Source: Ascidiella aspersa (Eukaryota). From it: a DNA stretch of 64,000 nucleotides. The DNA is taken from positions 7,502,001-7,566,000 of the forward strand of contig OZ004610.1 in the NCBI GenBank assembly GCA_963924565.1, in the 5' to 3' direction. A program made the translations under genes and the position numbers. The notes under the pieces are model-generated. The model worked only from the letters and a program-made list of their open reading frames with translations. It did no database searches and was not told the origin of the DNA. The stretch's first letter is position 1; every line of letters starts with the position of its first letter. This document shows, one piece after another, positions 6,820-33,762 of the stretch.

Positions 6820-7059
6820 ATTTGTGTGCGCCAATGCGTGGCGATACGTGTTGGGCTCGACCAATCAGAGCCACTGGAAGGAACGACGCGTGCCCTACAG
6901 CGCCCAGGCCAGGCACCAGTTCCAGAGCCGGGACTTTCCCGGGCGCTGCGGCCTGCCCGACGCCTACGTTTGCGACGGCTTCAATCACTGCGGCGACCAT
7001 TCGGACGAGTGCAATGCGAACTGCGGTGACGCCAAGAAGTTCATCTGCGCCAACGGAAA
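6820..7059 (+). CDS. LDLa-GPCR exon A (LDLa module 1 and start of module 2)
   Basis: Acceptor ccttgcag|, donor AA|gtaggt (phase 2). Encodes FVCANAW...CGLPDAYVCDGFNHCGDHSDECNANCGDAKKFICANG. GC-rich codon usage. Confidence 0.9.
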
Positions 7060-10000
7060 GTAGGTTACCGCTTTATAGATTAATGGTCTGAGACACGCCG
7101 CTTGAATTTAGTAAAAATCAAATTTCTGTTCCTATGTGTTTTATCAACTTCGATCTTAAGACAATGGCAAATATTTAGCGTTGTTTTAATTATTTCTGTA
7201 TTATTAAAACCGGATTATTAAGGCGGCCAACCAGGTTGCGTTCGAGATGTTGGTCGTATAGCCTACGCTAGGCTAGGTTCATTGCTGTAATATAATATGA
7301 AGGCAGAACAGCACCCATGCAAAAGAGCACTAAACCTTAAGACTAAAAATGTAAAAAAATGTTAGAGATTGAATGCCTTATTCATCGAAGAGTTACACAA
7401 TATAGTCGCGGCCCTCGGGATAAATGTTTTCATTTAGCCCTGGGATCAATTTGAGTATGAGATCCCTGAAGTAAGTTGTCTATACGTTTTGTTCAAACGC
7501 AATGAATGAGCTATTTTTTGGCACGGTTTCAGTGGATTTTACGCTAACAGACCTTGGGCCACAAATTGTGGAACGCCAATTAGACTATTGAAAGGTTATG
7601 AGCTACTGTCCTAGTCCAACGTATAACAATAGCAAGTCATGTAAAGGCATTAATATAAATGCTTCAAAACTGATAAGATTTATTTTATTCGTAGTATTTC
7701 TTGTAAACCCATCAACAACGAGAAACCATTAGCAACCGCATTTTTCAATTCACAAAATATGAGGCGAAAAATCTCATTTTTAACCAAAATGTGCTGACTA
7801 TATATAAAACGCTTAAATTGAGGTCAAGTCAAATACCTATAGCACTTAGCCCTACAATTACTACATTCAAGGCAAAACAGCGCTTTTTCAGGCATAATTT
7901 GTAAATAGTGAAATGCACTATTTTTCCTTCTTCTAATACCTGAAACTTTGATGGTAGCGCAAAGGGCACATAAGAAAAAAAGCGAAAAAGCTAAATCTTA
8001 AAGCTGGCTGCCTAGGCGGGAAGAATAGAAGAAAAAATGAGGAAGGGCGCCAGTGTTTCTTGATCTGTCGATATTGGACGGATCGTATCGACGAACCGTC
8101 ACAATAATGGCCTCGTCGTCAGCCCGTGTGCGGTAGCGGGCGGTTTGGGTCGAGGGCCCACCAAGCCCATGCTCTGCCGGTTAAATAATAAATGTAGAAG
8201 CGCGAGTATTTATATATTCACGCCACGGCTTTTCTTCGTCTTATTGCGAGAAATGGGCGTCCTGGCCTTGATTGATTTACTGTAACACTGTCTCAACACA
8301 ACTCCATCTTTATAGCAAGTTAAATCGCATGTGTAAAAACCGGGAAGAAAGACAGCATCATATTTTCGAAATATTATTTAATAGTTTTTGTTGTATGTAT
8401 TATTTAATACTTTTTGTTGTATGTAATTAAGGGGAATACCATTGTAACTGTCGTAAGTGTTAAGATTAACAGTGAGCTTGCTAAACCGCATGTTTATGTA
8501 AGTACTTTATCGGATCCATTAGTTTTCAGTAAGTTTTATTATCTCTTTGCCACAATATTTCATTCTACAATCTAAAATATATGGCTAGCGCTAGAACGAG
8601 GTGTTTTACTTTATTTTTGATTTGATTTTTTAAACAAATTTGAGTAAAATGGTTTCTAATGGCCCCATTATTTCTGGTAAAAGTACCAAATTTAGTGCGC
8701 AACCATCAACAAAAAGGCTTTGTTTTGGTTTTCTGCTTATCACGGAGTGTATGGAGAACAAAGGGGTCTTAATATATACACAATACATATACCTCTTAAA
8801 AAAATGTGTCAGACAATTACAATATACGCTAAAAAAATATATATATTTATATATTTATGCCGTTTCAAAAATGTGTTTTCAGTAGTTTTACTCCAAGCGA
8901 TCGTAGCGATATAAGAACACAAAAATGTATTTCGAGAGTGATCTACCTATTTTTTATTTAACTGTTAAAATTAGTTTCTAATCAGGCAAAATAAATTTGT
9001 CAACATCAAAGAAAAACTGATATTTCAGTATTTTTTATTCAATTTCGAGAACTATTAGAAAATGCCCGCCGATGTAATTTTGCTAAAGTGGCTTTTAAAA
9101 TGAAATTAACGTCGAATGGAAAGGAGAAATCTCTTCGCACAGGGCAAACATGCAGTAAATTTAATTTATTTACTGACTAATACGAAACGGTCGCCGAAGT
9201 TCGAAAAACGATTCTACAGTTTAAACCTGAATGTAAGTTCCGCCCTACGTTTAAAATAATCCATTAGTGCGCTTGGTAAGAATTGTAGAAAACAACCTTA
9301 GCCTAATATAGTCAAAGCAAAACAGCTCGACGTCGAGGTCATAATAACGAATGGCGTGGATTTGACTAAACTCGCTTGGACAAAATGTCTGGCTTTATCC
9401 TGTAGTGTTTCAAATATTTTTACTATTAAATCAAAACGTTTGAACCGGGTTTATACTTTGGCTTATGGGCCTGACTATTGCAAAATACATTTTTATGAAA
9501 AAAAATGTTCCAACACGGTTGTCCATCGCCACGTGTCTATAAATTTCGGACAATGCCATTAAGGACTTGAAAACTCTACGCATTCCAGTAGCTTTCGGTG
9601 GAGAGGCACAGCATGCAGCACCTCAAATCAAACGCACAACCTCGGTAGTGGCGGGTCGGACGATTTTTCGCGTCACATTAAAATTCTGGGCCCTTTAATT
9701 CGCGGCCGGAGAGGCTTCGGGAAAAATCGATCGGGATTAAACACGTCAGAGACCAAAAAACGTCCAGCTCTCATCTTAAAACGATAGGTAGCCATCGGTT
9801 GTTGTTCTCCGGTTGTTGGTTCTGGCATTCTTGTGAACGTGACATTAGATGTATCGCCCCAGAGTTCGGTGCGCAGTGCAATGCAAGGTTGGATTGTTCA
9901 AAACCACCCTAAGAAAGACTATAAGCAATTTGGAGTCTTTATGTTATTGGGGTTCTCTCTTAACCTCACATGTCCCAATGGTCAATGGACATATTCAGCT

Positions 10001-11918
10001 ATTTTTTTACAAAACTATAGTCACTTGGAGAACGCTTTAGTTTGGCCTTTTCGATTGCAAGATGTTTGGTAGTTGTGCATCACGATTATTAACCTGACGA
10101 TAAAATGAATGTGGTAGCCATATGACTCGTTCTTCAACAAAACTCTTAGGTTTTGTTTGAAACTTTCACATGTTACCTTTATTTTGAACTGGCTTTAGTT
10201 GTTTCGCTACATTACATTAAATAAAATGAATGTACTGCAGCTAACACAAAGGGGCTCTCCCTATAAACCATACATTAGAGTTTGGATGTCCGAAAATATT
10301 GGATACCCGATGCGAGGTGGTAGTATCGGTACTCGTCCGATACCAGGGTGATATCGGTGTCGATCCAAAGCGACATTAATATATAAAAAAATTCGCATTC
10401 AAGATAATTTTATCCAAAAATAGTATGTTAACAACTAAAAGCAACTAAACTCTAAAGTAAACTTGGGCCTGATAAACTGCAAAAACAATTGCATTTGACT
10501 GTTTCAATTTCACCTAAAAGCCAGTTTGAGCATGCTACAACGTCATTGATATCGGATCGGGTGGTGGTGCTTTTTGTCCAAAATAACAGTTATAGGTTTC
10601 AGAGTAAAATATTGGATATCACTATTCTGGGAGTTTAATTTTTTTGTGAAGGTGCATTATTGGTTAGAACCTCCTTTGCCTAATTTAAAGTAAACTGACT
10701 TAGACATCGCAGTAGAACCTTTTTACTCCAGCCAGCAAAGTAAAATCGTTACTCCAGCCAGCAAAGTCTGTCCGTTGTAGTTTTAAAAGTCTGAAATAAC
10801 CGTAGTAGAAATGCTGTCCGGATACGGCCGATTCGCCGAACCGCGTCGCCCGCTACTAATTCGTGGGCTCCGCAAGAGATCAGAAAATTCCCGAGCGTGC
10901 CGATAAGTGCCTTTTGCGTGTTTGTTTCGAATCTCAAGGGGGAGGGGGTCATTAAAAATTTTCCCGACTGTGTTTTAAAAGGCTGCTTGTCGGGATGCTT
11001 AAAAAGCTATCTCGGCGGGTTAAAAGTTGTCACGAAAAAAGGTTGTGAAACGCGGAGAACTTTTTAACTCAGTTTCTCAACCTTGGATTTTCGCAATTTT
11101 CTCGAATGTGCCGCAGAACCAATTGCAATACTAACCATCTGAAATACTGAGGTCGGCGATCCATCTAATTCAAACGGCGTCACAATATGAGTGACAAGCC
11201 CTCGTTGAGAAATACTGCTTTTAAGTGCTATTCATCACTAAATACATCGCTGAGAAATTTTATGTTTAAAGCGCACTGTGCCTTACTTTATTTTTCGACA
11301 AGCTTTTCAGGCTGCATGTATATTGTCACCTAATTAATAATAATTAAATTTGTTAAATAATCAAGATTTATAAATTTATATAATATACAACCAATTTGCC
11401 TACAAAAAAATATATTTGAGCAGGGTAAAACCTTGGTTGAAGACCCATGAGCCTAAAATTTGTGTATTTTTTGTTCGCTAGAATTATAAAATTTTGAATG
11501 CCGTTATTGAATATCGACTGGCCGACATTGCACATCCAATATGGAGTGTTTTCGAGAATATGTTTTTACGAAAAAATCGATAGCAATTTAAAATGTACGG
11601 CATTTCTGTTTTTTCCTGTTTCGCTACCTGGTTGGTTGTAATGGAGAAAAATTCATTTGGATACGAACTTAACTGGTATGTTACTGTAACAACTTTTCCT
11701 TGTTTAGAATAAATATACTCTTAATAAAACAAATATTTAACTACTCTACTGCTTCAATAAGTCGTTTCAAAAACAACCGATTTTTTGGAATGAGAAACAC
11801 AATTTTTGTTTGTTTTTTTGTGTTGGCAGTATTTTGAATTGATTCATCGTAACGGCCGATCAATGGAATTTAAATCTCGGCAATTCCGTTAATCTTGAAG
11901 TATACGATTTTTCATTAC

Positions 11919-12411
11919 CAGTGTTGTAAACAAGTCATTTGAAATGACTTAAGTCCCAGTCAAGTCATTTGAAAAATAACTTAAGTCTAAGTCAAGTATT
12001 CTGCAAAAATAACAAGTCAAGTCCCAGTCCAAGTCATCGGTTGCCCAAGTCAAGTCCCAGTCCAAGTCATCGGTTGCCCAAGTCAAGTCCCAGTCAAGTC
12101 ATTATGAGAGCAAGTCAATTTCAAGTTATGTTATTGTCATAAAAGTAAACTGTTAAACTATTATAATCGATAAACTCATCCGATAAGGAGCAATATTTTA
12201 ACTAAAAAATATCACACAGGCTATATACAGCAATTTTATTGTTTAATGTGCAAAACCTGGGATATATTTTATTAAAAAACACTTAATTTAATCCCGAGAT
12301 GTTTAACAAAATGACTTAAGTCCAAGTCAAGTCATTTGTCCAAAAGACTTGAGTCAAGTCAAGTCACTTGTCCAAAAGATTTAAGTCAAGTCAAGTCATT
12401 TAAAAACAGTG
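11919..12411 (+). mobile_element. AAGTC-repeat family MITE, right end truncated
   Basis: Starts CAGTGTTGTAAACAAGTCATTT, with CAAGTC arrays at both ends and a 31-bp internal tandem duplication. Homologous to the copies at 3798 and 19229. Confidence 0.8.
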
Positions 12412-13304
12412 AATGCGAATTCGTCTTATACTGACATGTTGTAACTCAGTATACATCAGCACCTGATATTTTGGAACTCTCAATTTATATTTACGACGGT
12501 TAAATTAGCAAAATATCAGATATTGTTCGAACGCCCAAATGCTGTGTTGTTATTCGTCTGTAACAAGCTATAGTGTTGCATATAAAAATTCACCTAAAAT
12601 ATATGGAAACAAATATATTCACAGGAATAAAATAATACACCAAGTGGATTAAACCAGTGGTACGTTTTTCAAAAACTTTTCGAGTTATTTGCATGGAGGT
12701 CGCCTTTGCAATATTTTATTGACCCTTTTGCAAGAATGATATGAAAAGTTATTAGGTTATTTTTCAAATAGACATTTGTAGAATGATAAAAAACGATATT
12801 GGAAATTTTGTAAAAATGGGTGCGCTTGTTTTTACCAGCTCAGGGTGTTTAAGTTTTAAATACCTTAATAGTTTCTTTGGGAGTCTAGAAAGCATTAGGC
12901 TAATAAAGGTTTTAAATAACTGCAAAAACTATAGGTGACTTTTAAACAAATCGTTGTGTCGAATATGCCTAGTTCAAAACGGAAATTTTCGTTTGAACTC
13001 CTAGTACTAAATAACTCAAATTTCGAACAGGTTAGAAACAGCCGCTTTAAAACGAGAAACGACGATGCAGTGCAAATAAAAGGTCGGCCGACGGGTTCAG
13101 CGCTTCGCTCAATCGAGTTGGTATCCGCAGATTTCAATCGAACGAATGAATAAGTAATAAAGGGCGGGGGCTTAAAGCAAGGCAAATTAAGACGGCCAAA
13201 TCAACGACGCTCACAAAACAACCGCTATACGTACGGCAATATGTCCCAGCTTAAAAATCTATAAGAAACCGCGTTTTGAATGCGTGACGACTGGCTACCT
13301 AAAG

Positions 13305-13751
13305 CAGTGCTTCTTAAATTTTTTTAGTTTTGTTCACCCCTAGCATCTATCTCAGATTTCATTCACCCTTGTTTCATAATATGATAAAACTATTTCGTCT
13401 ATATATAATAGCACAAAATGACTTAGGTTGTTTCGATTTTTGTTAGATCAACTCAAGCTAAGTTTTACCATTGCAAATGTACAATTTCTCGAGTCCAGAA
13501 ACATAAAGCTACAAAATCACAAAACACAGTCACCAAATTTTTGTACGTATACACTCAGTGCAAACCAACTTCACCATTACAATAAGCAAAGAACACTAAA
13601 AAAGAGCAGTTCAGTAGTCGATTTACTGTAGAAAATTGTTTATGATGCTGCTGAACTTTCGTTCACCCTTATTCACCCATTGTAGTTGGTTCACCCCTGC
13701 AAAAGTTTTATTCACCCTGGGGTGAACCATTAACCTGGTTAAGAAACACTG
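13305..13751. mobile_element. hAT-type MITE with TTCACCC subterminal repeats
   Basis: TIRs CAGTGCTTCTTAA / TTAAGAAACACTG. Flanks acctaaag / acctaacg (7 of 8). Confidence 0.8.
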
Positions 13752-15642: not shown

Positions 15643-15780
15643 GCGAAATGCGGCGAAATGCGGCGAAATGTGGCGAAATGCGGCGAAATGCGGCGAAATG
15701 CGGCGAAATGTGGCGAAATGCGGCGAAATGCGGCGAAATGCGGCGAAACGTGGCGAAATGCGGCTAAACGCGGCGAAATG
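15643..15780 (+). repeat. 10-bp minisatellite (CGGCGAAATG), about 14 copies, with a 40-bp higher-order period
   Basis: Read directly. The TGGCGAAATG variant recurs at 15671, 15711 and 15751. Confidence 0.95.
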
Positions 15781-16305
15781 CCCACACTTATGGCCTATAA
15801 CGAAATGCGGGCCTGCTGAAAACACCGAGAGTTGAATTGTGCAATTCGTTTAGCAAAGTAACCGCGTTGCCTGTATTTAACGCAACTTAACTACAAAGCA
15901 GTGCACCAAAAGGATATGTTTTTTTTTTCTAACACTCAAACGTTAAGATATATGGACTACGACCCTGGTAAAGTATTTCGTAAAAATTATCAGTCGATAA
16001 TTTGTTTTCAAATTTCCGGCCACAGTTGTTTTAAATGACGTTTAGGAATTTTACATTGGTTACCTTGACGACACTTGTTTGCCTGTTCATTGTATGCTAA
16101 ACAAGCAAACAAAGTTACACTCATAATCACTGTTATCGGATTTTTACCCAAATTCTTAAAAGAAAAAATCACATGGGTGCGCTCTGAAAGTGTGCTTTTG
16201 CAAGTGTTAACTTCTACAGAAGGCGAATGGGACCCAGTAAACGGCTTACCAATTACTCCCATCTAGAATAAAACCTCCTTGTGTTGTATAGTAAATGGCC
16301 TGTGT

Positions 16306-16914
16306 CACCCCATCCGTCAGAAATCAGTGCAGTTCTAACCAAAAAGGTCTACGACAATCAGTGCATTCAAAGGATCAAAAAGTCCGACTTTTAGACTTTG
16401 AGGTCTTGGACAATGCACTAATTTGCATTAACAAATGTGCATAAGAAGATTAAGTTTAACAATACTTGACCCAACCAAACCCAAACGCTAACCAGCGCCC
16501 TAACCCAAATAATGTGCGATAATTTAATAATTATAACGCTTCAGGCCCCAATACCTCAATTTGTGACGTAATAATCTTAAATACAATGGACGAGAAACCA
16601 TCCGAGTTTGGGCTTTTTTCCCCAGCATTTAAAGAATTATTAAAATAACGCACATTATTTGGGTTAGGATTCGGGTTAGCGTTAGGGTTTAGGTGGGTCA
16701 AGTGTTATTAATCCTATCTCATGTTTTTTGTTATCTTTTCTGAACTTTTAATGAATATATTTAATTTATCTTCGTCGGAAATTTACCTAAAGGTCCAAAT
16801 CAGTGCATTGCCAGGACCTCAAGGTCTAAAAGTCTAGACTTTTCTGCCATTGGATGCCCTGATTGTCGTAGACCTTTTTGCTTAGAAATGCACTGATTTC
16901 TAACGGATCGGGTG
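16306..16914. mobile_element. Foldback-type non-autonomous DNA transposon with about 120-bp TIRs and a 7-bp TSD
   Basis: Left end CACCCCATCCGTCAGAAATCAGTGCA; right end reverse complement CACCCGATCCGTTAGAAATCAGTGCA. Inner inverted repeat (CTAACC-rich, about 16460-16545 vs about 16620-16710). CCTGTGT is duplicated at 16299-16305 and 16915-16921. Confidence 0.85.
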
Positions 16915-17785
16915 CCTGTGTTGTATAGTAAATGGCCTGTGTTGTACAGTAAAGGGCTTGTGTTGTACAGCAACGGGCCTGGGTTGTACAGTGCAGAGCT
17001 TGCGTTGTAGGTAAAGGGCCTGTGTTGTATGTAAAGGGCCTGTGTTGTACAGTAAAGGATTGTGTTGTACAGCAAAGGGCCTGGGCTGTACAGTGCAGAG
17101 CTTATGTTGTACGTTAAGGGCCTGTATTGTACAGTAAAGGATTGTGTTGTACAGCAACGGGCCTGGGTTGTACAGTGCAGAGCTTGTGTTGTCAGTAAAG
17201 GGCTTGTGTTGTATAGTAAATGGCCTGTGTTGTACAGTAAAGGATTGTGTTGTACAGCAAAGGGCCTGGGCTGTACAGTGCAGAGCTTATGTTGTACGTA
17301 AAGGGCCTGTGTTGTACAGTAAAGGATTGTGTTGTACAGCAAAGGGCCTGGGCTGTACAGTGCAGAGCTTATGTTGTACGTTAAGGGCCTGTATTGTACA
17401 GTAAAGGATTGTGTTGTACAGCAACGGGCCTGGGTTGTACAGTGCAGAGCTTGTGTTGTACGTAAAGGGCTTGTGTTGTATAGTAAATGGCCTGTGTTGT
17501 ACAGTAAAGGATTGTGTTGTACAGCAAAGGGCCTGGGCTGTACAGTGCAGAGCTTATGTTGTACGTAAAGGGCCTGTGTTGTACAGTAAAGGATTGTGTT
17601 GTACAGCAAAGGGCCTGGGCTGTACAGTGCAGAGCTTATGTTGTACGTAAAGGGCCTGTGTTGTACGTAAAGGGCCTGTGTTGTACAGTAAAGGATTGTG
17701 TTGTACAGCAAAGGGCCTGGGTTGTACAGTGCAGAGCTTATGTTGTACATAAAGGGCTTGTGTTGTACAGTAAAATGCCTGTACG
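16915..17785 (+). repeat. Minisatellite with a 20-21 bp unit (TGTGTTGTACAGTAAAGGGCC variants) and about 82-bp and 267-bp higher-order repeats
   Basis: Read directly. Near-identical ORF translations are offset by 267 nt (17062 vs 17329). The first unit is stranded at 16280-16305, left of the foldback element. Confidence 0.95.
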
Positions 17786-19228: not shown

Positions 19229-19625
19229 CAGTGTTGTAAACAAGTCATTTTGATGACTTACGTCCCATTCAAGTCATAATTAGAGCAAGTCAATTTCAAG
19301 TCAAACCATTGTCATAAAAATTAAACGTTGAGGTATTAAATTAAATTGATAAACTATTACGATTATGATCTTTACACAGCTAAAAAATAACACAAAACGC
19401 AATATATAGAAAGCAAATGATTTTATTTAGAAAACTTAAGATAAATAACCCAATTTCTTATTGAAAAATGCTCAATAAAAACACTTTAATTCAATACAAG
19501 TTACTTGTCCGAACGACTTAAGTCAAGTCATTTGTCCGAATAGCTGAAGTCAAGTCAAGTCATTTTCTCCAAAAGACTTTACTCAAGAATTAAAAAACAG
19601 TAGGTGCACTGTGATTACAACACTG
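19229..19625 (+). mobile_element. AAGTC-repeat family MITE, full length
   Basis: TIRs CAGTGTTGTAA / TTACAACACTG. Flank ggctttt is duplicated on both sides. Confidence 0.85.
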
Positions 19626-20839: not shown

Positions 20840-20940
20840 TTGCATCTCCTCTTCGAACAAGTGCGATTTTCACGATGACTGCGGAGACGGTAGCGACGAG
20901 TGTCTTGACGAATGCACCAAGTCCTTTGTCTGTGGTGAAG
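20840..20940 (+). CDS. LDLa-GPCR exon B
   Basis: Acceptor tattttcag|, donor G|gtgggt. AA+T gives Asn and completes FICANGNCISSSNKCDFHDDCGDGSDEC across a 13.8-kb intron. Absent from the ORF track. Confidence 0.92.
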
Positions 20941-23900: not shown

Positions 23901-24903
23901 GAAAAGTGTCGGGTTCCATTTTCGGACGTATTTTTTCTAATGATTTTTTTTTAAATAAACCCTTTGTGCACCGCAAAGCAATTGGTCGCAAGCTGGGAGG
24001 CAATGAAATATGCAGGCTATCGAGAAATTCGAAACTGCCATTGTGTGTGTGCGATGAAAATTTTATGCAACGTTCGCCGCTTAAGCGTAAAACGGCATTT
24101 CGATTCCTGGCAGCGTTTTGCTTGCGGTCATGGCTAATATTACGCTGTTTTAAAAGTAATGCAAATCAGATGGACATCGGTTTTGGGTGATCAATTATTG
24201 ACAAACTGGGTAAGGTTTCGAAACCAATCCCATCAGATTAACGCATTGTTCTAGAAACAAGTGAAAATGATTGAGTCTCTTACGAATTAAGAGAGTGGTG
24301 ATGGCTTAGTTTGTAGCGAAATATACTTCTTTTAAATGACTGAAACTCATTAATGATTGACTTTGACCAAGGCAGGAAAGTCTAAAGAATATTTACGTCT
24401 ATACAGTTACGACATTCCAAATACTTCCCACTCAAAAATGCTATACGCTTGAAACTGGAGGCTTTTCAACAATCACATGTGCACAAAATGTCGACTTATT
24501 GCTACAGATGCGTAATGACTGTATTCAATGACTTGAGTATAAGATCCATATAGCTTGACATAAGTAAAGTCGTTTGAAAAGATGGAATGACATGGACTGA
24601 AGTTATTTATTAGAAATACTCTTCTTTAAATTGAACAACGAGGCCTGACATAGATTTGTTAAACAAAAGTGGTCAAAAACCAACCTGCGTTTTCAAAACA
24701 GTATAGACAAACTGTCAAAAGTAAAACTAGGCCTGCGCAACAAAACATTTCTACGTTTTAATTTTATTAATAAAAGCCTGGTATCAGCCCAAAATACCGT
24801 GTATCGGTACCGGGCCACAAAGTATTCGACATCCTCAGCAATGAACGTAAACATAAAAAAACACCCCTAAATCGTATCACACCGTTCTTCGTCTTTGTTA
24901 CAG

Positions 24904-24926
24904 GCAGCTGTACCTCTTTCAACATC
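24904..24926 (+). other. Duplicated acceptor plus 23-nt candidate micro-exon (copy of the start of exon C) with a GTAAGT donor
   Basis: 24861-24924 aligns with 25161-25225 (atcgtatcacac..ttcttcgtctt.gttacag|GCAGCTG). A consensus donor follows at 24927. Confidence 0.55.
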
Positions 24927-25204
24927 GTAAGTTACAGTATAGGTTAACAACCGGAAGTAAAAAAAAGTCTTAACCCTGAAGTAAATTTTGGCCTAAAAAC
25001 CCGGAACAAAAGCTTTCGAATTCAGTTTAGCCTATTTTTCGTTTTGGAGAATATAGCAATGGCGGTATTTGGCGTCAAATCAGATCGCGATACTTTTTGT
25101 CCAAAATATTGGGCATCGGTTTTGGGATAAAATATCAAGTATAGGACATCCGTAATATAGACACCCTAAATATCGTATCACACACTTCTTCGTCTTCGTT
25201 ACAG

Positions 25205-25355
25205 GCAGCTGCATCCCTTTTAACAAGTTTTGCGACGGGGTGGTCGACTGTCCGGACGGTAGCGACGAACTGCAGAAGACCAACAACGACAGCGCCACGG
25301 TTTCTTGCTCAAACAAACACAACTTCCACGACAACCAGTGCGTCTTGCCGGCAAG
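25205..25355 (+). CDS. LDLa-GPCR exon C
   Basis: Acceptor ttcgttacag|, donor AG|gtgggg; phase 1 in, phase 2 out. Encodes GSCIPFNKFCDGVVDCPDGSDELQKTNNDSATVSCSNKHNFHDNQCVLPAR. Confidence 0.92.
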
Positions 25356-25996: not shown

Positions 25997-26274
25997 GTAC
26001 CACTGCGACGGTTCGGAGCAGTGCCTGAACCGGCAGGACGAGTGCGTAGCTGGCTGCAAGTACTCGTTCTTCTGCGCGGACGGCAGCTGCCTGATCGACA
26101 CTAAGAAGTGCGACGGGCGAGCCGACTGCGCAGACATGAGCGATGAATGCGGCGGCGGCGGCGGCTGCCAGCAGGTCTTCCGATGTAACGACGGTTCCTG
26201 TCTCTCGATCGACCGCTTTTGCGACGGCGTCGAACACTGCCCGAACGGCGAGGACGAAATTGTCGAGTTTGAAG
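25997..26274 (+). CDS. LDLa-GPCR exon D
   Basis: Acceptor ttttccag|, donor G|gtatgt. Encodes YHCDGSEQCLNRQDEC...CDGRADCADMSDEC...CDGVEHCPNGEDE. Confidence 0.93.
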
Positions 26275-26537
26275 GTATGTGCGTGTTTTACGCAAGGTGT
26301 CTTGAAATGACTAAAGTCCCGGATTATTTACGAAATACGTTGCAAGATAATCGCTAAAGGTGTACTTATGATGCGTAAGCCGCAATCGTTGGTCAAAATG
26401 CAGCTTCAGAAGGGCTAGATCTCAGTTGTTAACACACATGATATGGTACTGTGGATCCCCTTCAATATGAAGTTGCTTGTACCAACAGATTGAGCAAGCA
26501 TTGGCGTGTGGTTGTTTCTCGACTCGCTCCTATCTGA

Positions 26538-26740
26538 GCCTGTGTAGCTCAGTTGTTAGCGCGACGTTCCCGATATGACCGGAGGTCGTGAGTTCGAACC
26601 TCACTGCATGCTAGTGCTTTTTCAAGCCTTCCCTGCTTGTATCATAGATCAACGGATTCGGTGAATCTGCAATGGCTTTCGGTGTATTCATACAAGAGTT
26701 GGCATGTTTTGAACGCCTCGATTAATGCTTTGTTTAATTT
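26538..26740 (+). mobile_element. tRNA-derived SINE-like element
   Basis: Pol III A-box TAGCTCAGTTGTT and B-box GTTCGAACC with a T-arm (gtgagttcgaacctcac), but no canonical anticodon arm. A related degraded copy including the body sequence lies at about 25470-25570. The 3' end is approximate. Confidence 0.65.
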
Positions 26741-27463
26741 CAATATTATTGGTGCTAATCGCTCTGTTCATCATGTTGAAATTGTATAAAAAGGTTTGTC
26801 GACATTTTATTCGAGCTTAAGGCCTCCTCCATGAACTTTTACCCACGACTGGATTCATTTTTCTAGCTTTGTCTTGCTTATGTGACAATCCTATACCCAC
26901 ATAAGTGGTGAAGTATCATAGTTATTCACGTATAGATAAACACCCACCGTAATATTCAACATGAGCTGTCATCATTGCGTTACACAATGAACCAAGCTCA
27001 CGTCATGAAATTTACCCGCCGTATGATCCTACATGTGCAAAACGTCATGATTATGTTTAGTCATAACTATAAGCTATAGCGTCGTGATTTTTTATAGTAT
27101 GATCTTAAACAAGCGAATACGATATCATATTTTGCCTACTGTAAGATCTCACAATAGCGAAACATTATACACGTCATGAACCGAAGTGACGCCACATCAC
27201 TTGTCGTAGTTGTCAGGTAAGTTCCATAAGATTATCATTTATAGTGTGTTCAAGTCTCACATGATTGTCAACCAGCATATTTGCAATGCGAACAGGTTAT
27301 TATTAAATAAAACTACATAAAGTTGCGCGGTCCGAGAATCTCTATAGAGACAGACAGTTTGAGAAACACTGCATTGGAATTCACTGCTTTAAATCCAACC
27401 GCTCACATACTTACCGACCCATACAACGAAAACGCCCAAGCAATTTGTGTTTATCTCCCACAG

Positions 27464-27713
27464 CCGGCCACCATTATTGTCCGAACCGCTACAACTGGAT
27501 CAAGAACAAGAAGATGCAGGGAGGAGACTCTTCCTCCTCCTCCTCTCACTCTCGCTCCTGTCGGCTCCCGGCTTCCCTGATGTGCGACGGCGTCGAGCAT
27601 TGTGACAACCGGACCGACGAGTGCCAGCCCGGCTGCGTGCACTCCTTCTTCTGTGACCAAGGTCAAACATGCGTGGCAAGGTCAGGCCTCTGCGACGGAC
27701 AGCCCACGTGCGC
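27464..27713 (+). CDS. LDLa-GPCR exon E
   Basis: Acceptor ctcccacag|, donor GC|gtaagt. Encodes AGHHYCPNRY...CRLPASLMCDGVEHCDNRTDEC...CDGQPTCA. Confidence 0.92.
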
Positions 27714-28049
27714 GTAAGTCGTTGTAGAAAATAAAATATTGTGAAAAATAAACTAAGGCAGATAACTAAGGTAACTAAGGTTTCTAAATCTGAAACATTT
27801 GATGACTTAAAAAACATTTTCTTTGTACGCTTTAATTTTTAATAATGGAATTTAGTGTGTTTTTAGATATCGATATCGGAATAAAAATATCGGACATCAG
27901 AAGTGCAATGTTGCTATGACTTGACTTATATTTGCAAAATACTTGACTTAGGCTTGGATGACTAGTTTACAACCCTATCTATACTATAGTTTACTCAACT
28001 GTTACCTAGCAAAGAAGATAATGCAATAAAAACGACACTCTAATTGCAG

Positions 28050-28164
28050 GGATCTGACGGACGAGCCACAGCTGGCGGTGGCCTCTCTCAACCACGCCAA
28101 GGGTTTCAAGTGTGCAGTGTCGCTTGCCATACCAAACCACACCAAAGAGTGCCTGATACCCCAG
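28050..28164 (+). CDS. LDLa-GPCR exon F
   Basis: Acceptor ctaattgcag|, donor CAG|gttggt (phase 0). Completes CDGQPTCADLTDE, then GFKCAVSLAIPNHTKECLIPQ. Confidence 0.88.
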
Positions 28165-28476
28165 GTTGGTGTTATTCGTTTAGAGAAAAGCCAACTGAAT
28201 AGCGAAACGACCTGGGTTCATGCTGACCTATCGAAAAGGTTCATAGGATTTTCGAAACACGCCAATGAGCAGAGATAGTGTTTGAACTTGAAACGAATTT
28301 GTTCAATAGGGCCAAGTTTAGCTGTTATAAAAATGTCCGCTTTTAGCATTTTGCGTAACCCTATGCTGGAATGGGCCTTTTTACACGTTCCAGCTAGAGT
28401 TAGCCTATCTCAAAGAGCATGATTAGACAGAAGGGACGCGGACGTTAACAGGCCATCTACCCTATATCTATAATTC

Positions 28477-28939
28477 CAGGGGCGGCATAACAATTTTTTC
28501 AGAGATGGCGTCACAAAGTAACGTCACATAGTTACGTCATACCGTGGCGTCACAAGATTATACGTCCAAATGTGACGTTAGAAAGTTACATCTAAACGTG
28601 ACGTAATAAAAAGTAACCTTAGAAACATCACACAGTTCGTTTATTTGGTTATAGTTTTTAAATGGAGAGGTTACTTCCAATACAAAAGCTACAACGATGT
28701 AATCGATTCGCGCGAAACGCAAAACACCTTTATATCGTTTAAGTTGCCCAAGTTTAATTTTGATGTTGCGATAGGACGTACGACACAGGCTAAAACAATT
28801 TATTAAATTCGGCTAAGACGGCAACATGATGAGAAATTCCATTTAAGCAACATAAGGAGAATTTAATTTACTTATTTAAAATAGTCAAAACATTCAGTTT
28901 GGTAGGCATGGCCACGTGCCCCCTCTTAATCCGCCCTTG
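28477..28939. mobile_element. Degraded hAT-like MITE (CAGGGGCGG...ATCCGCCCTTG)
   Basis: Imperfect TIRs and internal ACGTCAC/GCGTCAC motifs. No TSD recognised. Confidence 0.45.
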
Positions 28940-30620
28940 TCATCTGATCTGATTTTTAAACCGCGAAGGGAAAGTGTTTACTGCAAAAAACTGTACGCTG
29001 TTGGCCGCCATGTTTCAAGGGCTGCTAGGCAACTATTTGCGCTGTGTTTTTACGAGTGAGCTATTGATTGACGCAAATGAGCTATTGATTGACTTAAAAT
29101 TGATTTGCTCAAATTGTATTGTCGTTTAACGCGCCTTACTGAAAAGACGAAAAACAATAATGGAAAATATACCAGCAGGCACTGTTTTAGATTGGCGCTA
29201 ATGATAATCTTATTGAGCGGTAGTTTTACCAGTATTGGAATTATTTGAGCAACGGTACAAAATATGACCGTTGTCCAGCGACTATAGAGTAGTGCGGCGT
29301 TTTACAAACCCTCAGGCCCATCAGGGGGGTACGTAGCAGTCTTCAAGGTGCCATAAACATGTCTTGGTTTACTATTAGCCTGTAAACTTTTTTTTGGTTT
29401 TGTTATGTCTTTAGAGACCTCTCTATGATGTTATTTAAAGCATTGTTCGAATTCGTGAGAAAAAGTTATTTTTACGACTGACTTTACTCTTCACTGGGTA
29501 TTAAGTCTTTCCAAAATGACTTGTTAACAACACTGCAAAATAAAGACAAGGCGTCTTTGTGATTTAACCACCCATGTTCTGGTTACTTTTAGTAATAGTA
29601 GTAAAGAACACCAAACTATATGCTTATCGGTATCACTAGCTACCATTACCATTAATACATAAAAAAAATGCAACAACAGTTACCTTTGTTCGCTCCTAGT
29701 AGAAAATTCCAAGAAACAGAATTTCTTTAGTTCCAGTAGAGCAGCTTTGGGTTTTACACTTTCACATGGCGCATTGCTGAACTGTAAAGCGCAGCTAAAC
29801 GAATTCGTCGGTGGACTGCGTTCGAGTTTTGTACGCTGATTAGATTTATCAAAAAGCATTTGCTTGCGGCTAAAGGCGGTAAAACTAAACTGAAATTAGG
29901 TTTGACTGTATTATAGGTTAATGAAAAATTCTTGAGCAGTTCTATCACAAAGTTTTTATACCACTTCGACTATATGTATTGCTACAAGTAGACCGACCAG
30001 TATAATTCAGACCGTTGGGTCTGCAAGTTCATTTGATATTGATCGTTTGCAATATACATTGCATTAAAAGTGTAAGCACTACGTTAAGACCACTTAAATC
30101 GTTATGGATGTTCAGGATAACTCAATAAGGGTCAGATAACAAACAAAGCTTAGGACTGCATCTATAAATAGACAAATTTATAAATCTGTAACTTTGTTGT
30201 ACGCTATGTGAGTAGATAGAAATCACCCTTCTGGTGTAAATGAAGGTAAAAAATGCCGTTTCGGCAGCAGATACAGCTGTACTCATCAAGGTTAATCAAT
30301 AGTTTTGTTGGTTTATTATTGTTTATCTGCTCAGCAATGCAGACTAACTTATGTTATTGCATCCAAAAGTTGGTAAATCCTTTTTAATTAAACTTCAGTA
30401 ATTGGGCAGTTGAACTGGTCTCACGTCTCCAGGGTGTTTTAAAGGTAAAAATAATTTCCTTTTCAATCGCTAATCTGTAAAAAAACTTTACAAATGGATG
30501 TTAAACCAGTACAGGACAAAATAAAATATCACCAACAAAAATTCGTTAAAAATGAAAAGCTCAAATCGTTTCCCTGACAAACACAGTGTATTGTTTTTAA
30601 ACTTGTTAACTGTACAATAG

Positions 30621-30742
30621 GAGCTGCTGATGGGCGACCCTAGGGTGGACTGTGACGATGTGAATGACACCTGCATGGCTTTAAACGGGAAAGAGTCCAA
30701 CTGTGAGCAATGCTTAACCAGCAACACGACCATCACCAAGAG
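30621..30742 (+). CDS. LDLa-GPCR exon G
   Basis: Acceptor caatag|, donor AG|gtaact; phase 0 in, phase 2 out. Encodes ELLMGDPRVDCDDVNDTCMALNGKESNCEQCLTSNTTITKS and joins exon F to exon H in frame. Confidence 0.85.
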
Positions 30743-31577
30743 GTAACTAATATCAGCTGGTTTTACAGCGGTTCAAAGTGTTTTAATCGTTTTAATGGTA
30801 TTTAACCTCTTTTTATGAATAAAAAATTGGAAAAAATGTGCATTTAAAAAAACATTTATCCCAAAATTAGCCTTAAGCAAAAAAACGCATCTTGTTTGCA
30901 TTTTCAGTTAAGGTAAATAAAACGTAGTAAGAAATACGTCGGTCAATTCGATTTTATAACCGATATGCTGGCAACCTGGCAGGCTGGCATGTTATGGATC
31001 TGATTTAAAACCATCAAGGTTACAGCGGGAAGGTGTTTTTGATCAAATTCATGTTATTTTCATTCTATTTTACATATGTTGCCTAAACAAGATAAAACAT
31101 ATAGAAGGGTTGCTTGTTGCTCGTTACATTGACTATCTGAAATGATGAAATCACCTAATACCCAAAAATGATGTAAACAGTTTGGTATAAAGTCCTTTAG
31201 AATTTAGATATATTTAAAACACAGCACGAATAACTGAAAGCACGTGGTATAGTATATGGGTTGGTTTTGAAGGTAAACATGCTACTTTGCAACGTTAAAA
31301 TGATTTATTTGGTTTCTCTTTTGGGTCGGTTTAAACTTTGAAAGGTTAAGTTGTGTAACAGCCAATTGATTAAATTGGTATAACTTTTGGTTTGGTATTT
31401 AGGTAAGTAAATCTAATCAAAGATACTATATTTATCATTAATTTAACTAGCGCAAATTTGTACTGAATAAATTGGTGTCACGTTAGTTGGTTTTGAAGAG
31501 CAAAATTTTGCGGTGTTAAAAAGCGCTTTTGAAATGACTGACAGTCCCGCCTTAGTTACCTTTTCGTTTATTTTCAG

Positions 31578-33762
31578 TCAAATCTGCGACGGCGTGTTCG
31601 ACTGCCCGGACCTTTCCGACGAGTGCTTCTGCTACGACGTGGCGCCATCGGCCATCTGCCGGCGCACCTGTTTCTCGCAACGTACCGAGCGCTGTCCGTG
31701 CGCGGTCGGCCAGGTCCCGTGCATACTCGAGACCGCCAACGCGACTGATTCATCGGCGGGAAATCGTGCCCGAAACGCCGCTGAGCAAATACAGTGCGTA
31801 GAGGTCGGGCGCTTCTGCGACGGGACGAGCGACTGCTTGAACGGCGCCGACGAAAGATTTTGCAGCGGCGGCAAAGCGGCCTCGTGCGGCGCCGGCGGCA
31901 ACTGTCACGATGACGTCACTGCCACGTCAATGATGACGTGCTCGCGCAACCGCGACACGCCTTACCTGCCCAAGTACGCGCGCGCCTGCGACGGAAAGCC
32001 GGAGTGCTTTACAATGGAGGACGAGTGCGAGGTGTGCGAGCGGCCCTTGGAGCACTGCGCCAGCCGATCGGTGGACAACATCTTCACCTGTAGCGCGGGA
32101 ACCTTACCCGGAATCCTGGTCTGCGACGGCTTCAGCAACTGTCCGGACAACAGCGACGAGCTGAACTGCCGCGATCGCTTCGTGTGCGGCGGCGGCGAGC
32201 GCTACAGCGTCGAGACGGCGCGACGCTGCGATTTCAAGGAGGACTGCGCCAACGGGACAGACGAGCGAGGTTGCGTTAACACCCATTTCTACTGCGAAGG
32301 CGGCGAACCTCCATTTGTCAACGTGCGGCGAATGTTCGACGGCAAGCAGGACTGTGACGACGGCAGCGACGAGTGCCCGACTGGGGTCTTTAACAGCTCG
32401 GTGTTCTCATCAAAAGAATACCTCATTAAGAACCACTTTCTCAAGGGCATGGTCTGGGTCATGGGCCTACTGGCGGTCGGTGGCAACGTAGCGGTTATGG
32501 TCAACACCGTTCGAAATCTTCTTAACTCGGAACGCCGCAAGTTAACCAAGGTGGCGGTAATCTACAACTGCTTGGTGCTGAATCTGTGCTGCGCCGATTT
32601 CCTAATGGGCGCCTTCCTAATCGTGCTTGGACTCAAGGACGCCCTGTCAAGCGGCAACTACTGCCACGAGGACCATTTCTGGCGTTCAGGGGCTCTCTGT
32701 TCAACGCTGGGGGTCTTGGCCGTTCTTTCAAGCGAGGTTTCGCTGATGACGCTAGCCATCTTGTCAACTTACCGAGCGTACTGCGTAATGCGACCGGTAC
32801 AGAGCCGCGTGCTTAACGTTACCACCACTATGCTGTTCGCGGCTTGCACTTGGCTAGCAGCCGGGGTTATCGCATTTTTACCGTTGTCAGGCGCTTTGCG
32901 TGACTACTTCATTTCTCACGCTTGGGTCACGCATAACCCCTACTTCAAGACAGACGTGATCGACAAGCCCGACTTTGCCGATTTCCACGTCACGCTACGC
33001 AACTACGTCAACGTGACGTCACCGCTCGAGGTTACGTCACACGCGTGCGAGCGCGCGCAAGGCGGCGCCTCGTGGCACTGCGCCGGGCCGACGTTGGCCC
33101 AGTTCGATCCGGAATTTGGCGTGGTCGGCTACTTCGGCTACTACAGCAAGCACGCCACTTGCCTGCCCAAGCTGTTCGTATCACGCGGCGACGTTGCCTG
33201 GCAGTTCTCGATCGCCGTGACGCTGCTCAACTTCCTGCTGTGCCTCTACATCGTGCTGGCCTACTGCGTCATCTGCCGCCCGCGCCAAATCAACAAGACT
33301 GCCTTCTCGAGCCAGAGCACGCGCAACATGCAGAAGAAGATCGCAGTGTTGGTGGCGTCGGACTGCGCCTGCTGGCTGCCAATATGCACCATAGCGTTCC
33401 TGTGGTTCGCTGAGGTACAAGTGTCCAGCATTGTGTACGCCATCACAGCCGTGGTGCTGCTTCCCATCAACAGCGCGCTCAACCCGCTCTTCTACTCGAA
33501 CGCGTTGCACAATCTAGGCCTAGAGCTGCTCGGTTTCGCGCGCAAAATAAATCTCAGCGGACTCTGTTTCTTTGCCGGGGGTGGCGGCAGCGGGGCCGGG
33601 GGGGAGGGGCGCGGGTCGGGCGGCGCCGGTCGGGGCGTGGACCCGGGCGGGAACCTGCTCGAGGCCACCGATTTCGAATTGCATGCGGTATCAAGGTCGG
33701 AGTCCCGACTTGTGACCGAGCACACGTTCGTCGAAGGGCCGCTGAACGAGTCGATCATTTAA
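31578..33762 (+). CDS. LDLa-GPCR terminal exon H: about 6 LDLa modules plus the complete RXFP/GRL101-like class A 7TM domain and a Gly-rich tail
   Basis: Acceptor ttattttcag| inside the 749-aa ORF. LDLa CDG..C.D.SDE motifs; hinge FSSKEYLI; TM1 GN; TM2 NLCCADFLMG; TM3 C..G.LAVLSSEVS; TM6 DCACWLP; TM7 LPINSALNPLFY; stop TAA at 33760-33762. Confidence 0.95.

What the first reader, a model, noticed from the sequence alone, without database searches (positions are those of the whole stretch)
6820..33762. Relaxin-receptor-like GPCR with about 15 LDLa modules and no leucine-rich repeats
Seen: eight exons splice with consistent phases into about 1146 aa. About 15 LDLa-like modules run straight into the hinge (CPTGVFNSSVFSSKEYLI) and the 7TM domain. 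Established: RXFP1/2 have one LDLa plus LRRs, and GRL101 has many LDLa plus LRRs; the LRRs form the main hormone-binding site in RXFPs. LRR-less LDLa-GPCRs have been noted as an ascidian expansion and, to my knowledge, are orphans. Inference: this receptor must bind ligand through Ca2+-dependent LDLa modules, so it may be a lipoprotein, protein-cargo or pattern sensor wired directly to G proteins.
Basis: partly seen in the sequence, partly recalled or inferred. Interest (0 to 1): 0.75.

Follow-up and report, generated by a model that had tools for sequence, protein, structure and literature searches.

The report
Sea-squirt LDLa-array receptor without LRRs
This is an intact sea-squirt gene for a relaxin-receptor-like G-protein-coupled receptor whose outer part is a chain of about 17 LDL-receptor-type modules instead of leucine-rich repeats; the receptor type was described in Ciona in 2008 and still has no known ligand.

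Summary
Eight + strand exons (6820-33762) have GT-AG borders and compatible phases and sum to 1146 codons. The last exon alone encodes six LDLa-type modules, a hinge and a 7tm_1 domain. No LRR was found in any exon or intron.

The model is 5'-truncated by the window edge. Two more LDLa exons lie 2-9.4 kb upstream, giving about 17 modules; the signal-peptide exon was not found.

The 7TM is closest to RXFP1 (E 1.3e-24). The gene is the apparently single-copy ortholog of a Phallusia protein (60%) and Ciona LOC100175554, in an 8-member orthogroup (100/99) apart from this genome's intronless paralogs.

The class is in print: Ciona "LDLRR-GPCRs", including the lipoprotein-ligand idea (Kamesh 2008). 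This scan had already met the family on other DNA of this genome.

Added here:
- a family signature of a ~70-residue ECL2 insert, a non-acidic 3.49 and a highly conserved juxtamembrane half-LDLa module;
- a PDZ-ligand-like C-terminus;
- the same signature in a Mnemiopsis family.

RNA support is thin: 7 reads, no junction. The ligand is unknown.

The parts
6820..7059 (+). Exon A: variant 4-Cys module (His at the second cage position) plus the first half of a canonical LDLa. Starts at an acceptor, so it is not the first exon.
   Evidence: tblastn P0001 residues 122-204, 58% identity, E 5.5e-25; AG acceptor and GT donor; Pfam Ldl_recept_a 17.8 bits, below the cut-off because the module is split. 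Two more exons lie upstream of the window: L014 585-769 and 7794-7954.
20840..20940 (+). Exon B: second half of one LDLa module and first half of the next
   Evidence: P0001 residues 202-235, 62%, E 3.3e-6; splice sites; Pfam LDLa 23.1 bits
25205..25355 (+). Exon C: second half of an LDLa module plus the start of the second variant module
   Evidence: P0001 residues 235-281, 65%, E 8.7e-13; splice sites; Pfam LDLa 31.2 bits
25997..26274 (+). Exon D: end of the variant module plus two canonical LDLa modules
   Evidence: P0001 residues 284-374, 64%, E 8.5e-28; Pfam LDLa 50.6 bits, 2 stretches
27464..27713 (+). Exon E: third variant module plus most of an LDLa module
   Evidence: P0001 residues 377-451, 52%, E 2.8e-21; Pfam LDLa 23.1 bits; similar to exon A, 41% over 37 aa, E 5e-8; RNA reads in bin 27460-27659
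28050..28164 (+). Exon F: end of that LDLa module plus a Cys-containing linker; no Pfam hit
   Evidence: P0001 residues 451-488, 50%, E 2.4e-5; phase-0 donor; no family at E<=1
30621..30742 (+). Exon G: irregular Cys-rich piece; no Pfam hit
   Evidence: Matches Ciona P0002 residues about 156-197, 42%, E 8.4e-6 in a 3.5-kb sub-search; splice sites; a little RNA depth in bin 30660-30859
31578..33762 (+). Exon H (terminal): six LDLa-type modules, hinge, 7TM, C-tail and stop in one open frame
   Evidence: ORF 31513-33762; P0001 residues 525-1230, 59%, E 0; Pfam LDLa 65 bits (5 stretches) and 7tm_1 50.1 bits; GC 0.564 at 32001-34000 against 0.35-0.46 elsewhere; RNA reads in 3 bins
32281..32376 (+). 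Juxtamembrane half-LDLa module (H6; 3 Cys, full acidic motif): the best-conserved extracellular element of the family
   Evidence: 75% identity to P0001 and to P0002 and a mean of 65% to distant tunicate paralogs. The other modules score 19-45% and the TM core 34-35%. Also recognisable in 16 of 16 ctenophore-type proteins.
32377..32454 (+).
   Evidence: Alignments A1 and A2
32455..33543 (+). 7TM bundle plus helix 8. D2.50, R3.50, CWLP and NPLFY are kept; 3.49-3.51 reads Y-R-A at 32770-32778.
   Evidence: Seven hydrophobic cores and the motif table; RXFP1 7tmw_R E 1.3e-24
32884..33135 (+). ECL2 insert of about 70-80 residues, absent from RXFP/GRL101-type receptors
   Evidence: The W4.50-to-Cys45.50 spacing is 102 residues here, 88-103 in 30 of 30 LRR-less tunicate rows and 23-27 in 9 of 9 LRR-bearing rows. 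Query residues 160-239 are unaligned to RXFP1.
33748..33759 (+). C-terminal -E-S-I-I, which fits the class I PDZ-ligand pattern
   Evidence: 7 of 8 orthogroup members end in S/T-x-I/V/L. The pattern itself is recalled general knowledge.

Best explanation
Shown. This is an intact, multi-exon ascidian gene for a rhodopsin-class GPCR of the LGR type C (RXFP/GRL101) lineage. It has no leucine-rich repeats and carries about 17 LDLa-type modules directly on the 7TM. It is therefore a member of the 'LDLRR-GPCR' class described in Ciona in 2008. Within that class it is the apparently single-copy, intron-bearing ortholog of a Phallusia mammillata protein and of Ciona LOC100175554. That sets it apart from the many intronless paralogs of this genome.

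Inferred mechanism (about 40% as a whole). The distal array is built as a threefold repeat of 'variant module + two canonical LDLa'. It captures an unknown extracellular protein ligand, probably partly through the Ca2+-caged acidic pockets that 9 of 17 modules retain. The nearly invariant juxtamembrane half-LDLa module and the hinge then act on the enlarged ECL2 and the helical bundle, much as the single LDLa module of RXFP1/2 is needed for activation. The bundle keeps R3.50, CWxP and NPxxY, so it should couple to G proteins. The loss of the acidic 3.49 residue suggests an altered resting state. The -ESII end suggests anchoring by a PDZ scaffold.
For: Gene structure and 1146 codons; upstream exons. 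LDLa plus 7tm_1 sit in one exon. No LRR was found: 0 of 10 exons at E<=1. For 10 LRR-bearing relatives run by tblastn on the window, every hit at E<=1 falls on LDLa exons or exon H, except one stray minus-strand hit at E 0.39. 0 of the first 30 homologs carry an LRR Pfam family, and P0001, P0002, P0008 and P0009 carry none.

Lineage: RXFP1 is the best PDB match, E 1.3e-24. In the careful tree the LRR-bearing versus LRR-less split is 100/100, the orthogroup of 8 is 100/99 and window+Phallusia is 100/97. Only one locus in the genome reaches 62% identity to P0001; the rest are 33-38%.

Last intron: four ORF-type predictions from other assemblies (P0004-P0007) begin homology at P0001 residues 522-531, the exon H start. 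The Ciona model P0002 runs colinearly across P0001 residues 330-1230.

Signatures: ECL2 spacing and 3.49; H6 conservation and C-termini; super-repeat, unit 1 against unit 2 of P0001 at 43% over 97 aa, E 1e-21, and exon A against exon E.

Prior literature: the class and the ligand idea are in Kamesh 2008. The need of the RXFP1/2 LDLa module for activation is stated in the abstracts of PMC4837482 and PMC3822782, as shown in the listing.

Transcription: the 7 RNA reads all lie with the first mate on the - strand, as expected for a + strand RNA in a typical stranded library.
Against: - No ligand, signalling or localisation data exist.
- RNA support is 7 reads from about 6% of one run, with no junction listed, and about 2 of the reads lie in the G/H intron.
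- The start codon and signal peptide were not found.
- 8 of 17 modules depart from the canonical acidic cage.
- The tethered-activator role of H6 rests on conservation and on analogy with RXFP1 alone.
- The ECL2 insert itself is poorly conserved: 18% identity to distant paralogs.
- Single-copy status rests on a search that scored 38 of 520 first-look candidates.
Confidence: 0.8

Rival explanations
1. One reading: a lipoprotein, protein-cargo or pattern sensor. The LDLa array binds lipoproteins or large protein complexes in a Ca2+-dependent way, as in LDLR/LRP, and passes the signal straight to G proteins.
For: There are many LDLa modules, 9 of 17 with the full acidic cage. Kamesh 2008 proposes exactly this and reports that most Ciona LDLRR-GPCR ESTs come from blood and haemocytes. 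It is compatible with the best explanation as a special case.
Against: There is no binding data. This gene is conserved and apparently single-copy, with module-for-module colinearity to Phallusia. That fits one defined endogenous partner better than broad pattern sensing. Half the modules are non-canonical.
Confidence: 0.25
2. A functional relaxin / insulin-like peptide receptor. The tunicate counterpart of RXFP binds Ciona-type INS-L peptides through the LDLa modules instead of LRRs.
For: The 7TM is closest to RXFP1. In this genome no locus showed LRR and RXFP-like 7TM matches side by side among the 85 listed matches.
Against: The LRR domain that binds relaxin with high affinity (PMC4837482 abstract, listing) is absent. 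Kamesh 2008 argues these receptors are functionally unrelated to relaxin receptors and reports one LRR-bearing candidate in Ciona. The 7TM split from LRR-bearing receptors is deep (100/100, long branch). The negative is weak: the search works exon by exon and scored 54 of 473 candidates.
Confidence: 0.07
3. A ligand-independent or mechanically gated receptor. The non-acidic 3.49 makes it constitutively active, and the long LDLa chain serves as an adhesive or tension-bearing tether, as in adhesion GPCRs.
For: The acidic 3.49 is lost in 30 of 30 LRR-less tunicate rows. The ectodomain is very long and modular. The PDZ-type end suggests a fixed position in the cell.
Against: There is no GAIN/GPS or other cleavage domain in Pfam. 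R3.50 and the other switches are kept. The claim that 3.49 changes raise basal activity is general knowledge, not a test on this receptor.
Confidence: 0.08
4. Artefact of modelling: the LDLa exons A-G belong to a separate LRP-like gene, or the gene is a decaying pseudogene.
For: No RNA junction was seen. No start codon was found. A 40-bp copy of exon C's acceptor lies in the preceding intron.
Against: Exon H alone already joins six LDLa-type modules to the 7TM. All exons are open with matching phases. Every exon is 50-65% identical to one Phallusia protein, in the same order. The Ciona model spans the same joins. RNA reads fall on exons E, G and H in one orientation.
Confidence: 0.03

Closest known systems
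Ciona LDLRR-GPCRs (Kamesh, Aradhyam & Manoj 2008, PMC2396169)
   Same: N-terminal LDL-A repeats, no LRRs, TM region similar to INSL3/relaxin receptors, tunicate, orphan. The Ciona ortholog LOC100175554 is 48% identical over exon H.
   Different: The paper reports 1-10 repeats per receptor; this gene has about 17. This member is multi-exon, apparently single-copy and conserved across species. The ECL2 insert, the 3.49 change, intron status and the PDZ-type end are not mentioned in the paper's main text: 0 occurrences of ECL2, DRY, intronless and PDZ.
RXFP1/RXFP2 (LGR7/8, type C LGRs)
   Same: Best solved-structure match for the 7TM (7TMW, E 1.3e-24). An LDLa module sits in the ectodomain. The pre-TM1 hinge and the ECL2 'YY..C.P' motif align.
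   Different: One LDLa plus about 10 LRRs, against about 17 LDLa-type modules and no LRR. The ECL2 spacing is 23-27 against 102 residues. Position 3.49 is acidic in the LRR-bearing receptors and Tyr here.
GRL101 and GRL101-like receptors (molluscs, arthropods, cnidarians)
   Same: Many LDLa modules on an RXFP-like 7TM. These are among the nearest hits after the tunicate rows and one ctenophore-labelled protein (E 1e-27 to 1e-21).
   Different: They keep LRRs between the LDLa array and the 7TM (Pfam). They form a separate clan (100/100), with a short ECL2 and an acidic 3.49.
Intronless LDLa-GPCR paralogs of the same genome
   Same: Same architecture and family signature. At least 37 further loci, in tandem clusters. 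Earlier notes of this scan put the number at 126-133.
   Different: 33-38% identity to P0001. Each lies in a single open frame of 889-1815 aa. They form their own clade (100/100). The window gene has at least 9 introns and clear orthologs in other species.
Mnemiopsis leidyi LDLa+7tm_1 family (e.g. KAL5269382.1)
   Same: No LRR Pfam family in any of the 98 rows, which include two tunicate proteins. In 16 of 16 sampled ctenophore-type proteins the ECL2 spacing is 88-96, position 3.49 is non-acidic, and a juxtamembrane LDLa-type module and a similar hinge are present.
   Different: Only 26% identical to exon H. Few LDLa modules (proteins mostly 690-830 aa). W4.50 is replaced. Homology versus convergence has not been settled, because no rooted tree was made.
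LDLR/LRP endocytic receptors
   Same: Tandem LDLa modules with an acidic Ca2+ cage. The Phallusia ortholog is auto-named 'LRP1-like'.
   Different: Those are single-pass receptors with EGF/beta-propeller domains and NPxY tails. Here the array ends in a 7TM GPCR, and no EGF or Ldl_recept_b domain is present.

Membership tests
Rhodopsin-class GPCR (Pfam 7tm_1) | 7tm_1 profile match above the curated cut-off | tested here: met
   50.1 bits against a cut-off of 30.5, E 3.5e-13, in two stretches split by the ECL2 insert
Rhodopsin-class GPCR (Pfam 7tm_1) | Microswitches D2.50, R3.50, CWxP, NPxxY and the TM3-ECL2 cysteine pair | tested here: met
   D, R, CWLP and NPLFY are present. C374 and C528 are invariant in alignment A1.
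Rhodopsin-class GPCR (Pfam 7tm_1) | Acidic residue at 3.49 (D/E-R-Y) | tested here: not met
   Y-R-A here. Non-acidic in 30 of 30 LRR-less tunicate rows, D/E in 9 of 9 LRR-bearing rows.
LGR type C (RXFP1/2, GRL101) | 7TM closest to the relaxin-receptor branch | tested here: met
   RXFP1 E 1.3e-24, then LHCGR 3.5e-17, FSHR 2.7e-12, TSHR 1.6e-11, LGR4 8e-8 and beta2AR 1e-6. No tree rooted with type A/B LGRs was made.
LGR type C (RXFP1/2, GRL101) | Leucine-rich-repeat ectodomain between the LDLa module(s) and the 7TM | tested here: not met
   No LRR family at E<=1 in 10 exons. No LRR portion of 10 LRR-bearing relatives hits the window. The last LDLa-type module abuts the hinge within one exon.
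LGR type C (RXFP1/2, GRL101) | At least one LDLa module in the ectodomain | tested here: met
   Ldl_recept_a in 7 of 10 exons
LDLRR-GPCR (Kamesh 2008) | LDL-A repeats at the N-terminus, no LRR, relaxin/INSL3-receptor-like TM region | tested here: met
   Definition taken from passages and section 14 of PMC2396169.
LDLRR-GPCR (Kamesh 2008) | Groups with the tunicate LRR-less receptors rather than with LRR-bearing ones | tested here: met
   The 37 | 14 split has support 100/100. The Ciona intestinalis and C. savignyi proteins fall on the same side.
LDLa module (PF00057) | Six cysteines and the acidic Ca2+ cage (D..D....D-E) | tested here: inconclusive
   9 of 17 modules have Asp at the second cage position. 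The others have E (1), N (1), H (3), Q (1), T (1) or are irregular (1). H6 has 3 Cys. These were read by eye. The cage positions are recalled from the LDLR literature. Ca2+ binding itself cannot be tested here.
Class I PDZ ligand | C-terminal S/T-x-hydrophobic | tested here: met
   -E-S-I-I. 7 of 8 orthogroup members fit. The motif definition is recalled. Binding is not testable here.

The most novel reading that the evidence does not exclude
The LRR-less LDLa-GPCRs are not an ascidian invention. They are one old metazoan receptor subfamily, shared with ctenophores and lost elsewhere. It is defined by three features: a ~70-residue ECL2 domain, a non-acidic 3.49 and an invariant juxtamembrane LDLa-type module that works as a built-in activator in place of the LRR/hinge apparatus. 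Within the subfamily, the window gene is the slow-evolving, intron-bearing member with a fixed endogenous ligand. The intronless copies form a fast-turning recognition repertoire.
Probability: 0.3. Interest if true: 0.65.

Novelty: new member of a known kind. Interest (0 to 1): 0.38.

Why it matters
The receptor class has been an orphan since 2008. It is the only known case of an LDL-receptor-type ligand-binding array wired directly to a G-protein-coupled bundle.

This gene is the best-behaved member for de-orphanisation. It is apparently single-copy, conserved module for module between ascidian genera, and intact.

The family-wide signature found here gives concrete mutagenesis targets: the ECL2 insert, the lost acidic 3.49 and the near-invariant juxtamembrane module. 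It also suggests how a type C LGR can work without LRRs, which bears on the still-debated role of the LDLa module and ECL2 in RXFP1 activation.

If the ctenophore family is truly homologous, the history of LGR-type receptors at the base of animals needs revising.

As a finding in itself, however, it is an ordinary new member of a published family.

Tried and rejected
RNA junctions. One RNA run of the same species label (X4) and three runs of unrecorded kind were laid on 27460-33459. X4 gave 7 reads and no listed joint. X1 and X2 covered exons and introns evenly, so they are genomic DNA. Junction confirmation failed.

Instead I compared where the predicted proteins of relatives begin.

I used alignments instead.

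Signal-peptide exon. P0001 residues 1-21 found nothing credible in the 20 kb upstream or in window 1-6900. The open frame of exon -2 has no in-frame ATG before its acceptor.

LRR exons hidden in introns. None was found by tblastn. That method is weak for short degenerate repeats. No profile scan of the intron translations was made.

A canonical LRR-bearing RXFP in this genome. One search listed 85 matches. The LRR-part hits and the 7TM hits lie at different loci. This is a weak negative.

Organism of the unnamed relatives. One search gave no names.

Self-BLAST of the P0001 ectodomain printed nothing. It was replaced by segment-against-segment BLAST.

Slips:
- One search took ORFs from one strand only. 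Redone.
- One search used a wrong frame and crashed. Redone.
One search finished the careful one.

Rows dropped from the trees:
- P0056 and P0059 for short cover. L002's longest open frame did not pass the cover filter either; the script printed no drop line for it.
- For one search, also seven long-branch rows (P0035, P0030, P0058, P0015, P0028, P0026, P0053) and ten near-identical Pocillopora rows.

Rejected readings: pseudogene or two-gene artefact, and relaxin receptor proper (see rivals).

Supplements of PMC2396169 (domain diagrams, EST table, sequences) were closed. They may show whether the Ciona ortholog was among the 14 listed receptors and where it is expressed.

Full report
WHAT IS THERE.

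The window has no N. On the + strand a 749-codon ORF (31513-33762) holds Cys-rich modules followed by a hydrophobic region. Pfam finds Ldl_recept_a (E 2.8e-18) and 7tm_1 (E 3.7e-13) in that one ORF.

A word search with the exon H product returned 59 proteins. The best are Phallusia mammillata (P0001, 1230 aa, 60% identity) and Ciona intestinalis LOC100175554 (P0002, 48%), so the window is ascidian. None of the first 30 rows carries an LRR Pfam family. Among the remaining 29 rows, 17 do; these are GRL101-like and relaxin-receptor-like proteins of other phyla.

GENE MODEL.

tblastn of P0001 on the window gives colinear matches for P0001 residues 122-1230. A sub-search with the Ciona protein found the one missing piece.

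The splice scan fixes eight exons:
- A 6820-7059
- B 20840-20940
- C 25205-25355
- D 25997-26274
- E 27464-27713
- F 28050-28164
- G 30621-30742
- H 31578-33762

All have AG/GT borders and matching phases. I checked phases from exon lengths only.

The window is G000:C4:7502001-7566000. In the 10 kb before it (L014), P0001 residues 22-63 and 62-116 match at 57% and 62% (E 3.5e-13 and 1.7e-18). The exons are L014 585-769 and 7794-7954. The second ends in the phase that exon A requires. The gene therefore has at least 10 coding exons over at least 43 kb. A signal-peptide exon was not found.

MODULES.

Exon-wise Pfam finds LDLa in 7 of 10 exons, nothing in exon -2, F or G, and no LRR family at E<=1 anywhere.

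At the second Ca2+-cage position:
- 9 of 17 have Asp;
- the others have E, N, H (three times), Q or T, and one is irregular.

The His/Gln forms are the same in Phallusia (alignments).

The array is a threefold repeat of 'variant module + two canonical LDLa'. In P0001, unit 1 against unit 2 gives 43% over 97 aa (E 1e-21), and unit 2 against unit 3 gives E 2.6e-15. In the window, exon A against exon E gives E 5e-8.

Introns fall inside modules, in phases 0, 1 and 2. They are not at the module borders typical of exon shuffling.

NO LRRs.

The last module, the hinge and TM1 are contiguous in one exon, so nothing can lie between them. Ten LRR-bearing relatives run by tblastn on the window hit only LDLa exons and exon H, plus one stray minus-strand hit at E 0.39 from a TM segment. 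P0001, P0002, P0008 and P0009 have LDLa and 7tm_1 only, while P0048 and P0049 show LRR_8 and related families.

WHICH 7TM.

Against PDB sequences, RXFP1 (7TMW) is best at E 1.3e-24. It is followed by LHCGR 3.5e-17, FSHR, TSHR, LGR4 8e-8 and beta2AR 1e-6.

In the careful tree of 51 7TM regions:
- LRR-bearing (14 rows) and LRR-less tunicate (37 rows) sequences separate at 100/100;
- the window gene pairs with Phallusia (100/97) inside an orthogroup of 8 (100/99) that includes Ciona;
- ten intronless paralogs of the same genome form their own clade (100/100).

The base of the tunicate clan is unresolved (69/80 and 48/0), so I cannot say the window lineage is the founder. The quick 68-row tree agreed.

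GENOME CONTEXT.

A search of the whole genome with P0001 gives one locus at 62% identity, this gene. It also gives at least 37 other loci at 33-38%, each in a single open frame of 889-1815 aa and several in tandem clusters. Only 38 of 520 first-look candidates were scored.

Earlier notes of this scan describe the same expansion on other DNA and estimate 126-133 copies. I confirmed only the lower bound.

Four ORF-type predictions of orthogroup members from other assemblies start their homology at P0001 residues 522-531, the start of exon H. The Ciona model is colinear over P0001 residues 330-1230. Both facts fit a conserved last intron and the proposed joins.

FAMILY SIGNATURE.

In alignment A1 (39 rows):
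- The spacing from W4.50 to the ECL2 cysteine is 88-103 residues in 30 of 30 LRR-less tunicate rows (102 here). It is 23-27 in 9 of 9 LRR-bearing rows.
- Position 3.49 is Y/L/C/F/T/H in 30 of 30 LRR-less rows, against D/E in 9 of 9 LRR-bearing rows.
- D2.50, R3.50, CWxP and NPxxY are kept.

The RXFP1 alignment leaves query residues 160-239 unmatched.

The juxtamembrane half-LDLa module is the best-conserved extracellular part. It is 65% identical to distant paralogs, against 19-45% for the other modules, 34-35% for the TM core and 18% for the ECL2 insert.

Seven of 8 orthogroup members end in S/T-x-I/V/L, here -ESII.

The main text of the 2008 paper contains none of the words ECL2, DRY, intronless or PDZ. 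A first-reader note on another paralog had noticed a long ECL2.

EXPRESSION.

One RNA-seq run of the same species label was available. With about 6% of it read, 7 reads lay on 27460-33459. All had the first mate on the - strand. They fell in bins covering exon E, exon G plus part of the G/H intron, and exon H. No joint was listed for the RNA run. X1 and X2 cover introns evenly and are genomic. This shows weak + strand transcription at most.

LITERATURE.

Kamesh et al. 2008 (PMC2396169; passages, section 14 read whole):
- name the LDLRR-GPCRs: 14 confirmed members in the text and 15 in the paper's table, each with 1-10 LDL-A repeats, no LRR and TM regions like the INSL3/relaxin receptors;
- report ESTs mostly from blood and haemocytes.

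The term LDLRR-GPCR occurs in that paper alone among the 35 papers returned. Two further searches and one review gave no ligand. For the RXFP1/2 papers I saw only the abstracts in the listing.

CTENOPHORE SIDE-FINDING.

One hit, Mnemiopsis P0035, has LDLa and 7tm_1 but no LRR. A search with it returned 98 proteins at E<=1e-8:
- 7 named Mnemiopsis proteins on contigs of 11.7-21.5 Mb;
- 88 unnamed proteins;
- then two tunicate proteins, P0001 (2.3e-30) and P0011, and one MetaClust protein without an organism name (P0170).

No LRR family appears in any row.

In 16 of 16 sampled proteins the ECL2 spacing is 88-96, position 3.49 is T or I, and a juxtamembrane LDLa-type module and a similar hinge are present.

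I found no mention of this in the passages or listings, nor in this scan's notes. Without type A/B outgroups I cannot separate common descent from convergence.

VERDICT.

The class is already known, and this is a new member: the conserved, intron-bearing ortholog. The ligand and the mechanism remain inference.

Noticed in passing
Proteins P0035 and P0076-P0169; not in the window: Mnemiopsis leidyi (7 named proteins on chromosome-scale contigs) and 88 unnamed relatives form a family of LDLa+7tm_1 receptors without LRRs. They share the tunicate signature: long ECL2, non-acidic 3.49, a juxtamembrane LDLa-type module and a similar hinge. After their own family, their next hits are tunicate proteins. 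I found no paper describing this.
   Followed up: partly
G000 loci L002-L012 and others listed (e.g. C8:5.24-5.35 Mb, C2:38.3-39.2 Mb, C5:3.3-4.1 Mb): At least 37 further LDLa-array+7TM loci lie in this genome. Each sits in one open frame of 889-1815 aa, a few with one stop, and many are in tandem clusters. Only 38 of 520 first-look candidates were scored. Earlier notes of this scan put the family at 126-133 copies.
   Followed up: partly
G000:C6:7.61-7.75 Mb and C9:15.57-15.62 Mb (L015, L018): Clusters of RXFP-like 7TM matches lie in open frames of only 434-501 aa. They appear to be family members with little or no ectodomain, like the 'Unclassified LGR-like' group of Kamesh 2008.
   Followed up: no
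window 24871-24910 versus 25172-25211: A 40-bp copy (92.5% identical) of exon C's acceptor and first bases lies about 300 bp upstream in the intron, followed after about 23 nt by GTAAGT. It is a possible cryptic or poison mini-exon. Another first-reader note (s1-805383) already flags it. There are no reads to test it.
   Followed up: partly
window 16914-17782 and 15643-15781: The A/B intron holds a minisatellite (periods 82/185/267, about 870 bp, 83-90% matches) that creates long spurious ORFs on both strands. It also holds a 10-mer repeated 14 times.
   Followed up: no
window 28460-28860 and 29460-29660: The DNA-contig depth jumps from about 40-95 to 260-3160 in these intron bins, with many small joints and loose ends. 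These are high-copy repeats in the F/G intron.
   Followed up: no
L014 1079-1105 and 1421-1462 (about 8.9 and 8.6 kb before the window start): Two short copies of the 3' end of exon -2 (matches to P0001 residues 55-63 and 55-68) lie in the intron just downstream of that exon.
   Followed up: no
window 36732-49350, - strand: Another first-reader note (s1-805308) proposes a minus-strand gene for a Cys-rich single-pass glycoprotein here. I saw only that no ORF of 130 aa or more lies in 34000-54000.
   Followed up: no
window 32001-34000: The GC fraction is 0.564 over the terminal exon against 0.35-0.46 in the rest of the window. This is a strong exon/intron composition contrast.
   Followed up: no
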